A stretch of 63,541 nucleotides of DNA, the filler included, from Schmidtea nova (lineage: Eukaryota), in assembly GCA_044892505.1 (NCBI GenBank). It is 4 parts of one record of this genome, joined end to end, with 100 filler letters (N's around TTAATTAATTAA, not from the genome) between each part and the next. Parts side by side here need not be neighbours in the genome. Positions count along the whole stretch, not along the records: positions 1 to 20,213 come from CM097882.1; 3 more parts are not named here. One strand, given 5' to 3'. A program made the position numbers and the translations under genes. Positions 6,373 through 6,756 of the stretch are shown here, in pieces (positions within the stretch are counted from its first letter, which is position 1; each line of letters begins with the position of its first letter). The notes beneath the pieces were generated by a model. That model saw only the letters and a list, made by a program, of their open reading frames with translations. It was not told where the DNA came from and did not search any database.

Positions 6373-6572
6373 ATTAATTCGTTCACATTCCGTATTCTGT
6401 ATCTGATTATTGTCATCATCCTTTGTTTCTTTTTCTTTGAATTTTCAGTTTTCGGTTTTCTCAATATTTTTTTTTTTTTTTTTTTTTCCAATTTTCGTTT
6501 CATTATTTGTTATCTGTTTTCTTTGAGCTAAATTTTTTATATATATTTTTTTTTTATACGATCATAAATTGT

Positions 6573-6588
6573 GGCCCTGAAGAGGGCC
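6573..6588 (-). promoter_or_regulatory. Histone-type stem-loop 1 (CAAUC GGCCCU-CUUC-AGGGCC ACAA) in the pPolB 3' UTR
   Basis: Matches the metazoan histone 3' hairpin consensus including flanks; 32/33 nt identical block at 60994-61026. Confidence 0.75.
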
Positions 6589-6756
6589 GATTGTACGTTC
6601 TCATATATATTTTTTTTTGTTGGAATCTTTCGGCTTAATCTTTCGGTTTAATCTTTCGGTTTAATCTTTTTTTTGATTTTTTCTATATCTTTTTTTTTTT
6701 TTTTTTTTGTTTTTTCATTATCCTGATTGTCATTGTCACCGTCGTCATCATTCGCA

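What the first reader, a model, noticed from the sequence alone, without database searches (positions are those of the whole stretch)
6572..6604. Histone-mRNA-type stem-loop in a Polinton DNA polymerase 3' UTR, conserved in a second divergent Polinton
Seen: on the pPolB sense strand, 168 nt after the stop, CAAUC-GGCCCU-CUUC-AGGGCC-ACAA. A 33-nt block containing it is 32/33 identical at 60994-61026 behind the second pPolB, while the flanking UTRs barely align and the coding regions carry many synonymous changes. Known: GGYYCU-(U/C)YUN-AGRRCC with A/C-rich flanks is the SLBP-bound 3' end of replication-dependent histone mRNAs, and a C at loop position 1 occurs in C. elegans. Inference: the virus-like element uses SLBP to restrict or boost pPolB mRNA in S phase or in oocytes. 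I know of no description of this in Polintons, but could not search.
Basis: partly seen in the sequence, partly recalled or inferred. Interest (0 to 1): 0.92.

Follow-up and report, generated by a model that had tools for sequence, protein, structure and literature searches.

The report
Histone-type hairpin after Polinton polymerase
An integrated virus-like transposon carries, 168 nt behind its DNA polymerase gene, an RNA hairpin almost identical to the one that ends nematode histone mRNAs, so the element may borrow the host's histone mRNA pathway, though only the sequence match is shown.

Summary
The hairpin is real. On the pPolB sense (minus) strand, 168 nt after the stop, it reads CAAUC-GGCCCU-CUUC-AGGGCC-ACAA. 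Rfam Histone3 scores it 29.6 bits, below the curated cut-off of 34, but with E 6.4e-05 for the whole piece it is the best RNA-family hit. It matches the C. elegans histone hairpin core at 15 of 16 positions and shares the ACA 3' flank. A second, weaker hairpin (GGUCCU-CUUU-AGGACC) lies 216 nt further downstream and differs by one compensated stem pair. No AAUAAA lies in the 517 nt after the stop. pPolB also lacks the ATAAACAA motif found upstream of most structural genes.

Evidence against a function:
- The distance from the stop is unusual (metazoan median 30 nt).
- Variant poly(A) signals lie before the hairpin.
- No AATCC or clear downstream element follows it.
- None of 8 close relatives (47-60% protein identity) has any such hairpin.
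- The host is unknown.

Verdict: a genuine histone-type stem-loop of the nematode class in a non-histone, virus-like gene. SLBP-dependent use is plausible (about 0.45) but unproven. I found no prior description.

The parts
6573..6588 (-). Hairpin 1 core: GGCCCU-CUUC-AGGGCC, histone-type stem-loop
   Evidence: Matches the C. elegans histone hairpin core at 15/16.
6548..6593 (-). Extent of the Rfam Histone3 (RF00032) match, including the CAAUC 5' flank and ACAA 3' flank
   Evidence: 29.6 bits, gathering score 34, E 1.9e-06 and E 6.4e-05 piece-wide.
6357..6372 (-). Hairpin 2 core: GGUCCU-CUUU-AGGACC. Same shape with one compensated stem pair. The flanks are not histone-like and a U-run follows.
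   Evidence: Histone3 12.5 bits, E 4.7. Terminator-like.
6589..6756 (-). 3' UTR stretch between the pPolB stop and hairpin 1. A-rich, with 3.5 copies of a 13-nt repeat carrying ATTAAA and a run of about 19 A.
6757..11028 (-). Protein-primed DNA polymerase B gene, intact, with an Endonuclease VII-type insertion and Asn/Gln-rich low-complexity stretches
   Evidence: relatives carry PF03175 and PF02945; E = 0.
12805..13598 (-). Adenovirus-type protease region: two ORFs in different frames (one frameshift, or two genes)
   Evidence: PF00770, E 5.5e-06. Frames.
13688..14908 (-). Putative double jelly-roll major capsid protein
   Evidence: PF21738, E 0.0051, below the cut-off. Its position matches the 409-aa gene of L095.
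16285..17331 (-). Integrase (rve core plus chromodomain), broken by one in-frame stop
   Evidence: PF00665 and PF00385. Stop count.
17953..18576 (-). A32/FtsK-type packaging ATPase
   Evidence: PF04665, E 5.3e-07.
18605..19132 (+). TBP-domain ORF, also present in relative L095
   Evidence: PF00352, E 1.5e-13. L095 gene with PF00352.
4530..5437 (.). Non-coding arrays beyond the 3' UTR: about 8 x GATGAGTCATC, about 10 x a 31-32 nt unit with TTTCGCGCCAAA, and CACGTG/TTGCAAC units. Not shown to belong to the element.
   Evidence: Absent from all 96 loci.

Best explanation
The window holds an integrated Polinton/Maverick (adintovirus-like) element. Its polymerase gene is followed by a true histone-type stem-loop of the class documented for C. 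elegans histone genes (GGCCCU stem, loop beginning with C). Most likely the pPolB transcript carries this hairpin. [quoted passage not shown] That would place the mRNA in the histone mRNA regime: made, translated and degraded in step with DNA replication, and possibly stored in the germline. Hairpin 2 would be a diverged paralogue that keeps its pairing and may act as a back-up stop, or it may be decaying. Shown: the sequence, the fold, the statistical significance, the strand specificity, the position in the 3' flank, and the near identity to C. elegans histone hairpins. Inferred: that the hairpin is transcribed, SLBP binding, the cleavage site, and the cell-cycle or germline coupling.
For: The Histone3 covariance model matches only on the sense strand, E 6.4e-05 for the whole piece, the lowest E-value among all RNA-family hits. 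The diagnostic features named in the 2026 survey are present: G-C at stem position 2, U at loop position 3, and a 6+4 architecture. The window strings GGCCCTCTT and AGGGCCACA occur 42 and 44 times in the C. elegans histone 3' UTR alignment, where the loops are CTTT or CTTA. That gives 15/16 core identity plus the ACA flank. The two GC-rich hairpins are the only ones in a 25% GC flank, and one stem pair differs by a compensatory C:G to U:A change. There is no AATAAA in the 517 nt after the stop, against 3.8 expected from base composition. pPolB also lacks the ATAAACAA motif that lies upstream of most structural genes, so it appears to be regulated separately. The pPolB ORF is intact.
Against: The score is below Rfam's gathering threshold, 29.6 against 34. 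The hairpin lies 168 nt from the stop, while metazoan histone stem-loops have a median of 30 nt and their conservation falls with distance. ATTAAA at +92 and +105 and AATGAA at +38 could end transcripts before the hairpin. The AATCC element that follows C. elegans histone hairpins is absent. None of 8 close relatives with at least 220 nt of 3' flank has any GC-rich hairpin or Histone3 match. The host is unidentified, so its SLBP and its histone hairpin type are unknown. Hairpin 2 lacks histone-like flanks, and its stem extends into them. Statistical support for the duplication is modest: 12/1000 shuffles with 120-nt flanks and 89/1000 with immediate flanks.
Confidence: 0.45

Rival explanations
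1. Passenger or relic. A piece of a host histone 3' UTR, or a chance near-copy of it, was picked up by recombination behind pPolB in this lineage. It is histone-derived in sequence but does nothing for the element.
For: The hairpin is lineage-specific: it is absent from 8 close relatives. Its distance from the stop is atypical. Candidate poly(A) signals lie before it. No AATCC or other clear downstream element follows it. Hairpin 2 looks degenerate.
Against: Two GC-rich 16-mers persist in a flank of 25% GC. The one stem difference between them is compensated. The 5' and 3' flanks of hairpin 1 keep the A/C character needed by the family model. The pPolB gene is intact, so the copy is not old debris.
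Confidence: 0.27
2. A generic structural signal unrelated to SLBP. The two short palindromes could act as hairpin-type transcription stops or 3'-end markers for pPolB, or for a convergent gene hidden in the N run. Alternatively they could be DNA-level binding sites for a dimeric protein.
For: The stems are self-complementary and fold on both strands (-13.0 and -9.7 kcal/mol on the plus strand). Hairpin 2 is followed by a U-run and scores as terminator-like. A 402-nt N run starts 128 nt beyond hairpin 2 and hides what lies there. From my own knowledge, giant viruses use hairpins as 3'-end signals.
Against: A generic hairpin would not need the loop and flank letters that match the histone family. 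The covariance model hits only the sense strand, with E 6.4e-05, and the core matches C. elegans at 15/16. No other gene of the element ends in a hairpin.
Confidence: 0.18
3. Chance resemblance in a low-complexity flank.
For: The first stage scanned a great deal of sequence, the score is under the curated cut-off, and E-values for short models are rough.
Against: No shuffle in 100 gives even one match to the strict pattern, while the window has two, 216 nt apart. E is 6.4e-05 after correction for 4227 families and 20 kb. Hairpin 1 beats all 200 shuffles in folding energy.
Confidence: 0.04

Closest known systems
Replication-dependent histone mRNA 3' stem-loop (Rfam RF00032 Histone3)
   Same: 6-bp stem, 4-nt loop, GG...CC ends, G-C at stem position 2, U at loop position 3, A/C-rich single-stranded flanks, and a sense-strand position in a 3' flank.
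   Different: It follows a DNA polymerase gene of a virus-like transposon, not a histone gene. It lies 168 nt from the stop, not about 30. It scores 29.6 bits, under the gathering score of 34. No clear purine-rich downstream element is placed as in histone genes.
C. elegans histone hairpin bound by CDL-1 (Keall et al. 2007, PMC1924863)
   Same: The same GGCCCU/AGGGCC stem, the same C-U-U start of the loop, and the same ACA after the stem: 15/16 in the core. Hairpin 2 has the exact CUUU loop.
   Different: The last loop base of hairpin 1 is C, not U or A. The 5' flank is only loosely similar (a GAAC...CAA motif, by eye). The AATCC element and the AATAAA that follow C. elegans hairpins are missing. 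It is not known that the host is a nematode.
Polintons/Mavericks and adintovirus-like elements of animals (Jeong et al. 2023, PMC10748475; Widen et al. preprint 10.1101/2022.07.12.499685)
   Same: The gene set: pPolB with an inserted nuclease domain, rve integrase, adenovirus-type protease, a jelly-roll capsid candidate and an A32-type ATPase.
   Different: Neither paper mentions histone, stem-loop, hairpin, UTR or polyadenylation. This clade is only about 33-35% identical in pPolB to named animal elements. It also carries a TBP-domain gene.

Membership tests
Histone3 stem-loop (RF00032) | 6-bp stem closed by a 4-nt loop, stable on its own | tested here: met
   -11.4 kcal/mol, z -3.84, 0/200 shuffles as good. 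Persists in the 431-nt fold.
Histone3 stem-loop (RF00032) | G-C at stem position 2 and U at loop position 3 (the diagnostic positions in preprint 10.64898/2026.10.14.759114) | tested here: met
   Both hairpins have them.
Histone3 stem-loop (RF00032) | Score at or above Rfam's gathering threshold | tested here: not met
   29.6 bits against 34. No hit at gathering.
Histone3 stem-loop (RF00032) | Lies shortly (median about 30 nt) after the stop codon of a replication-dependent histone gene | tested here: not met
   168 nt after the stop of a pPolB gene. No histone ORF lies upstream.
Histone3 stem-loop (RF00032) | Downstream element for U7 (purine-rich HDE), or AATCC in C. elegans | tested here: inconclusive
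   No AATCC. The whole flank is 50% A, so purine richness carries no information.
Histone3 stem-loop (RF00032) | Bound by SLBP, with the mRNA ending 3-5 nt after the stem without poly(A) | not testable with these tools
   No transcript or binding data are available.
Nematode-class histone hairpin (C-first loop) | GGCCCU stem, loop CUUU/CUUA, ACA 3' flank | tested here: met
   15/16 in the core plus ACA. Window strings occur 42 and 44 times in the C. elegans alignment. The last loop base differs.
Nematode-class histone hairpin (C-first loop) | The host is a nematode whose own histone genes carry this hairpin | not testable with these tools
   The host was not identified. No TTTCAG acceptors lie before the start codons.
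Polinton/Maverick element | pPolB plus rve integrase plus capsid, protease and ATPase genes | tested here: met
   The capsid call is weak (E 0.0051).
Polinton/Maverick element | Terminal inverted repeats | tested here: inconclusive
   No inverted repeat pair within the piece. The piece is cut at 20213 and has two N runs.

The most novel reading that the evidence does not exclude
A virus-like self-synthesising transposon has taken over the host's histone mRNA 3'-end system for its own DNA polymerase. The polymerase mRNA would then be non-polyadenylated, SLBP-bound and tied to S phase or to maternal storage. This would be the first non-histone, mobile-element client of that pathway.
Probability: 0.35. 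Interest if true: 0.85.

Novelty: new variant of a known kind. Interest (0 to 1): 0.62.

Why it matters
Histone mRNAs are described as the only cellular mRNAs that end in this stem-loop instead of a poly(A) tail (PMC4604434 abstract). A mobile element that copies the signal onto its replication gene would show how such elements time their replication to the host cell cycle or reach the germline. It would also give a natural non-histone substrate for studying SLBP specificity. Finally, a hairpin matched to one host class would be a marker of host adaptation in Polinton lineages that otherwise move between hosts.

Tried and rejected
1. An exact look-up of the window's own capsid gene found no record.
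2. For host inference I used a flanking transposon ORF. It has 2025 relatives, but none of the top ten clusters carries a name, and Pfam finds nothing in the full-length relative.
3. A search for terminal inverted repeats by self-BLAST found none in the piece.
4. A BLAST of the 3' flank against all 96 loci gave only poly-A matches.
5. Close relatives were scanned with Rfam and with a hairpin scanner, and no hairpin was found behind their pPolB.
6. L010 has a canonical-looking hairpin (20.8 bits, E 0.16). It lies about 1 kb upstream of that locus's pPolB at a contig edge, so I kept it only as a lead.
7. The nematode splice-acceptor TTTCAG is not seen before the start codons.
8. E2F-type sites occur only in the flanking array and not upstream of pPolB.
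9. The two 16-nt cores are not found anywhere in the searchable literature.
10. Michel et al. 2000 on loop-position-1 specificity is not held.
11. I did not build my own covariance model of nematode hairpins, because it would have needed pasted repeated sequence.
12. The miRNA-like Rfam hits at 4558-4664 are artefacts of the palindromic tandem repeat.

Full report
**Observation**

The + strand at 6572-6604 contains GGCCCT-GAAG-AGGGCC. On the minus strand this reads CAAUC GGCCCU CUUC AGGGCC ACAA. The minus strand is the sense strand of a 1423-codon uninterrupted ORF at 6757-11028.

As RNA the hairpin folds at -11.4 kcal/mol, and 0 of 200 shuffles fold as well. The same 6-bp stem appears in both the minimum-energy and the centroid fold of the whole 431-nt flank.

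**Is it more than chance?**

The strict pattern GGYYCTNNNNAGRRCC has two matches in the window and none in 100 shuffles. Rfam finds nothing at gathering thresholds. With permissive filters, Histone3 (RF00032) matches 6548-6593 on the minus strand at 29.6 bits, against a gathering score of 34. The E-value is 1.9e-06 for a 601-nt search and 6.4e-05 for the whole piece against all 4227 families. That is the lowest E-value of any family in the piece. The plus strand gives no match. The hairpin is therefore statistically real and strand-specific, but it fails the curated membership score.

**Which kind of histone hairpin?**

A 2026 survey names G-C at stem position 2 and U at loop position 3 as the diagnostic positions, and gives a median of 30 nt between the stop codon and the stem-loop in 2,281 metazoans. 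Both diagnostic positions are present here. The distance is not typical.

Keall et al. 2007 report that the C. elegans histone hairpin loop is CTTT (CTTA in four H2B genes), and that a 32-36 nt region around the hairpin is nearly invariant. I searched their supplementary alignment with strings taken from the window. GGCCCTCTT occurs 42 times, AGGGCCACA 44 times and GGTCCTCTT never. Hairpin 1 is therefore identical to the C. elegans histone hairpin core at 15 of 16 positions, differing only at the last loop base, and it shares the ACA that follows the stem.

The AATCC element and the AATAAA that follow C. elegans hairpins are absent. The title of reference 16 in Keall et al. (Michel et al. 2000) indicates that the nematode and human binding proteins differ in their specificity for the first loop base. 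I could not read that paper.

**A second hairpin**

At 6357-6372 the minus strand reads GGUCCU CUUU AGGACC, 385 nt after the stop. Compared with hairpin 1, one stem pair has changed on both sides (C:G to U:A) and the loop is the exact C. elegans CUUU.

Its flanks are not histone-like, and Histone3 gives only 12.5 bits, E 4.7. Its stem can extend into the flanks. A U-run follows, so a simple scan calls it terminator-like.

Both hairpins are preceded by a GAACG motif and, about 100 nt upstream, by a run of about 20 A. Alignment scores of the flanks exceed shuffles only moderately: 12/1000 shuffles reach the observed score for 120-nt flanks and 89/1000 for immediate flanks. An old tandem duplication is therefore suggested but not shown.

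**The 3' flank**

The 517 nt between the stop and the next N run are 50% A and 25% G+C. They contain no AATAAA, although 3.8 are expected from base composition. That expectation is crude, because A-runs inflate it. Variant signals exist: AATGAA at +38 and +253, and ATTAAA at +92, +105 and +434. The ATTAAA pair at +92 and +105 lies inside a 13-nt tandem repeat. These could end transcripts before hairpin 1, which is the main internal argument against the model. N runs at 5438-5676 and 5827-6228 hide what follows hairpin 2. I did not try to fill them.

**The element**

All on the minus strand are:
- an A32-type ATPase;
- an rve plus chromodomain integrase, broken by one in-frame stop;
- a weak double jelly-roll capsid candidate;
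- an adenovirus-type protease region in two frames;
- pPolB.

A TBP-domain ORF lies on the plus strand. The piece ends inside the element at 20213, and no terminal inverted repeats are found within it.

The octamer ATAAACAA occurs 11 times against 4.1 expected. Nine of these are on the minus strand at 12.6-18.6 kb, most of them 20-50 nt upstream of start codons of the structural genes, and none lies directly before pPolB. The relative L095 shows the same pattern, with 9 hits against 2.7 expected, all on the strand of its structural genes. pPolB is thus set apart from the structural genes at its 5' end as well as at its 3' end.

**Relatives**

The best pPolB matches (45-61% identity) are unnamed metagenome proteins. 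Named animal Maverick and adintovirus polymerases are at about 32-35%. I fetched 94 loci by protein pattern and two by look-up.

Eight close relatives have at least 220 nt after the pPolB stop. None has a hairpin of 6 bp or more with four or more G/C pairs within 700 nt. None has a Histone3 match. None shares 3' UTR sequence with the window beyond poly-A. The hairpin is therefore specific to the window's lineage and is not a feature of the clade.

One distant locus, L010, has GGUCCU UUUC AGGACC (20.8 bits, E 0.16). It lies about 1 kb upstream of that locus's pPolB at a contig edge, so I treat it as a weak lead only.

**Host**

The host is not identified. The window's own capsid gene is not on record. 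A flanking transposon-like ORF has 2025 relatives, none with a name among the ten clusters checked. The hairpin class suggests a nematode. The Bcl-2 gene in L095 suggests an animal-associated clade. The AT-rich, Asn/Gln-repeat-rich sequence, and the absence of TTTCAG acceptors before start codons, leave the question open.

**Mechanism**

If the host uses nematode-class hairpins, the relevant machinery is CDL-1/SLBP. It also includes a CSR-1 small-RNA route that acts next to the stem-loop and PETISCO, which binds the same region of maternal histone mRNAs in the germline. A polymerase mRNA that ends in this hairpin would be handled like a histone mRNA. That would suit an element that replicates with, or is inherited through, dividing germ cells. 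Every step beyond the sequence match is inference.

**Novelty**

I found no paper combining Polinton with SLBP and stem-loop. The two nematode Polinton/Maverick studies contain none of the words histone, stem-loop, hairpin, UTR or polyadenyl. A search for histone stem-loops on non-histone, transposon or viral RNAs found nothing relevant. The 2026 survey found no SLBP machinery in large DNA viruses. Neither 16-nt core occurs in the searchable literature.

**Verdict**

This is a genuine histone-type hairpin of the nematode class, sitting in an unprecedented place. Functional use is plausible at about 0.45 but untested. The rivals are a non-functional captured relic (0.27), a generic hairpin or DNA palindrome (0.18) and chance (0.04).

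1. The loci already fetched were only read and compared as they stand.
2. Before reading Keall et al., I recalled from memory, in my reasoning, an approximate nematode histone hairpin string. The comparison rests.
3. An early notebook entry lists the bounds of the two integrase ORFs. It was written before I recognised them as one broken gene, and those bounds bracket the break.
4. The consensus lines that the alignment tools printed by themselves were not used.

Noticed in passing
window 12624-18612 (minus strand); L095 4000-12268 (minus strand): The octamer ATAAACAA lies 20-100 nt upstream of most structural-gene start codons in the window (11 hits against 4.1 expected) and in relative L095 (9 against 2.7). 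It is not found before pPolB. It looks like a clade-wide promoter-like motif for the structural genes.
   Followed up: partly
window 18605-19132 (+); L095 12985-13431 (+): The element encodes a TBP-domain protein (PF00352, E 1.5e-13), conserved in L095. Together with the TATA-like ATAAACAA motif, this suggests element-encoded promoter recognition.
   Followed up: no
window 4530-5437: Just beyond the 3' UTR and the N runs lie a C/G homopolymer palindrome and then three tandem arrays. These are about 8 x GATGAGTCATC (TGAGTCA core), about 10 x a 31-32 nt unit with TTTCGCGCCAAA (14 E2F-type matches against 0.6 expected), and CACGTG/TTGCAAC units. None of 96 related loci has them. It is unclear whether they are element terminus or host flank.
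   Followed up: partly
window 2106-4420 (minus strand): A transposon-like gene in at least five ORF pieces. Its family has full-length members of about 740 aa and 2025 relatives in the protein library. It has no Pfam domain and no named member among the ten clusters checked.
   Followed up: partly
L010 301-346 (+): A distant relative's contig carries GGUCCU-UUUC-AGGACC (Histone3 20.8 bits, E 0.16). It lies about 70 nt after the stop of an unidentified ORF cut by the contig edge, and about 1 kb upstream of that locus's pPolB. It may be a second case of a histone-type hairpin near such an element.
   Followed up: partly
L095 12382-12759 (+): The 16 kb relative encodes a Bcl-2-domain protein, an animal-type gene. 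This points to an animal-associated clade.
   Followed up: no
window 6757-11028 (minus strand): The pPolB gene has long Asn-rich low-complexity stretches in its N-terminal third and a Gln-rich C-terminal tail that extends past the point where relatives end. This mirrors the (AAT)n-rich genome around it.
   Followed up: no
window 11030-12800: The 1.7 kb upstream of pPolB is 13-25% G+C and full of 37-60 nt tandem repeats. It is presumably the pPolB promoter region and has no ATAAACAA directly before the gene.
   Followed up: no
window 16285-17331 and 12805-13598: The integrase is interrupted by one in-frame stop. The protease region is split between two frames, which could be one frameshift or two genes. 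pPolB is intact.
   Followed up: partly
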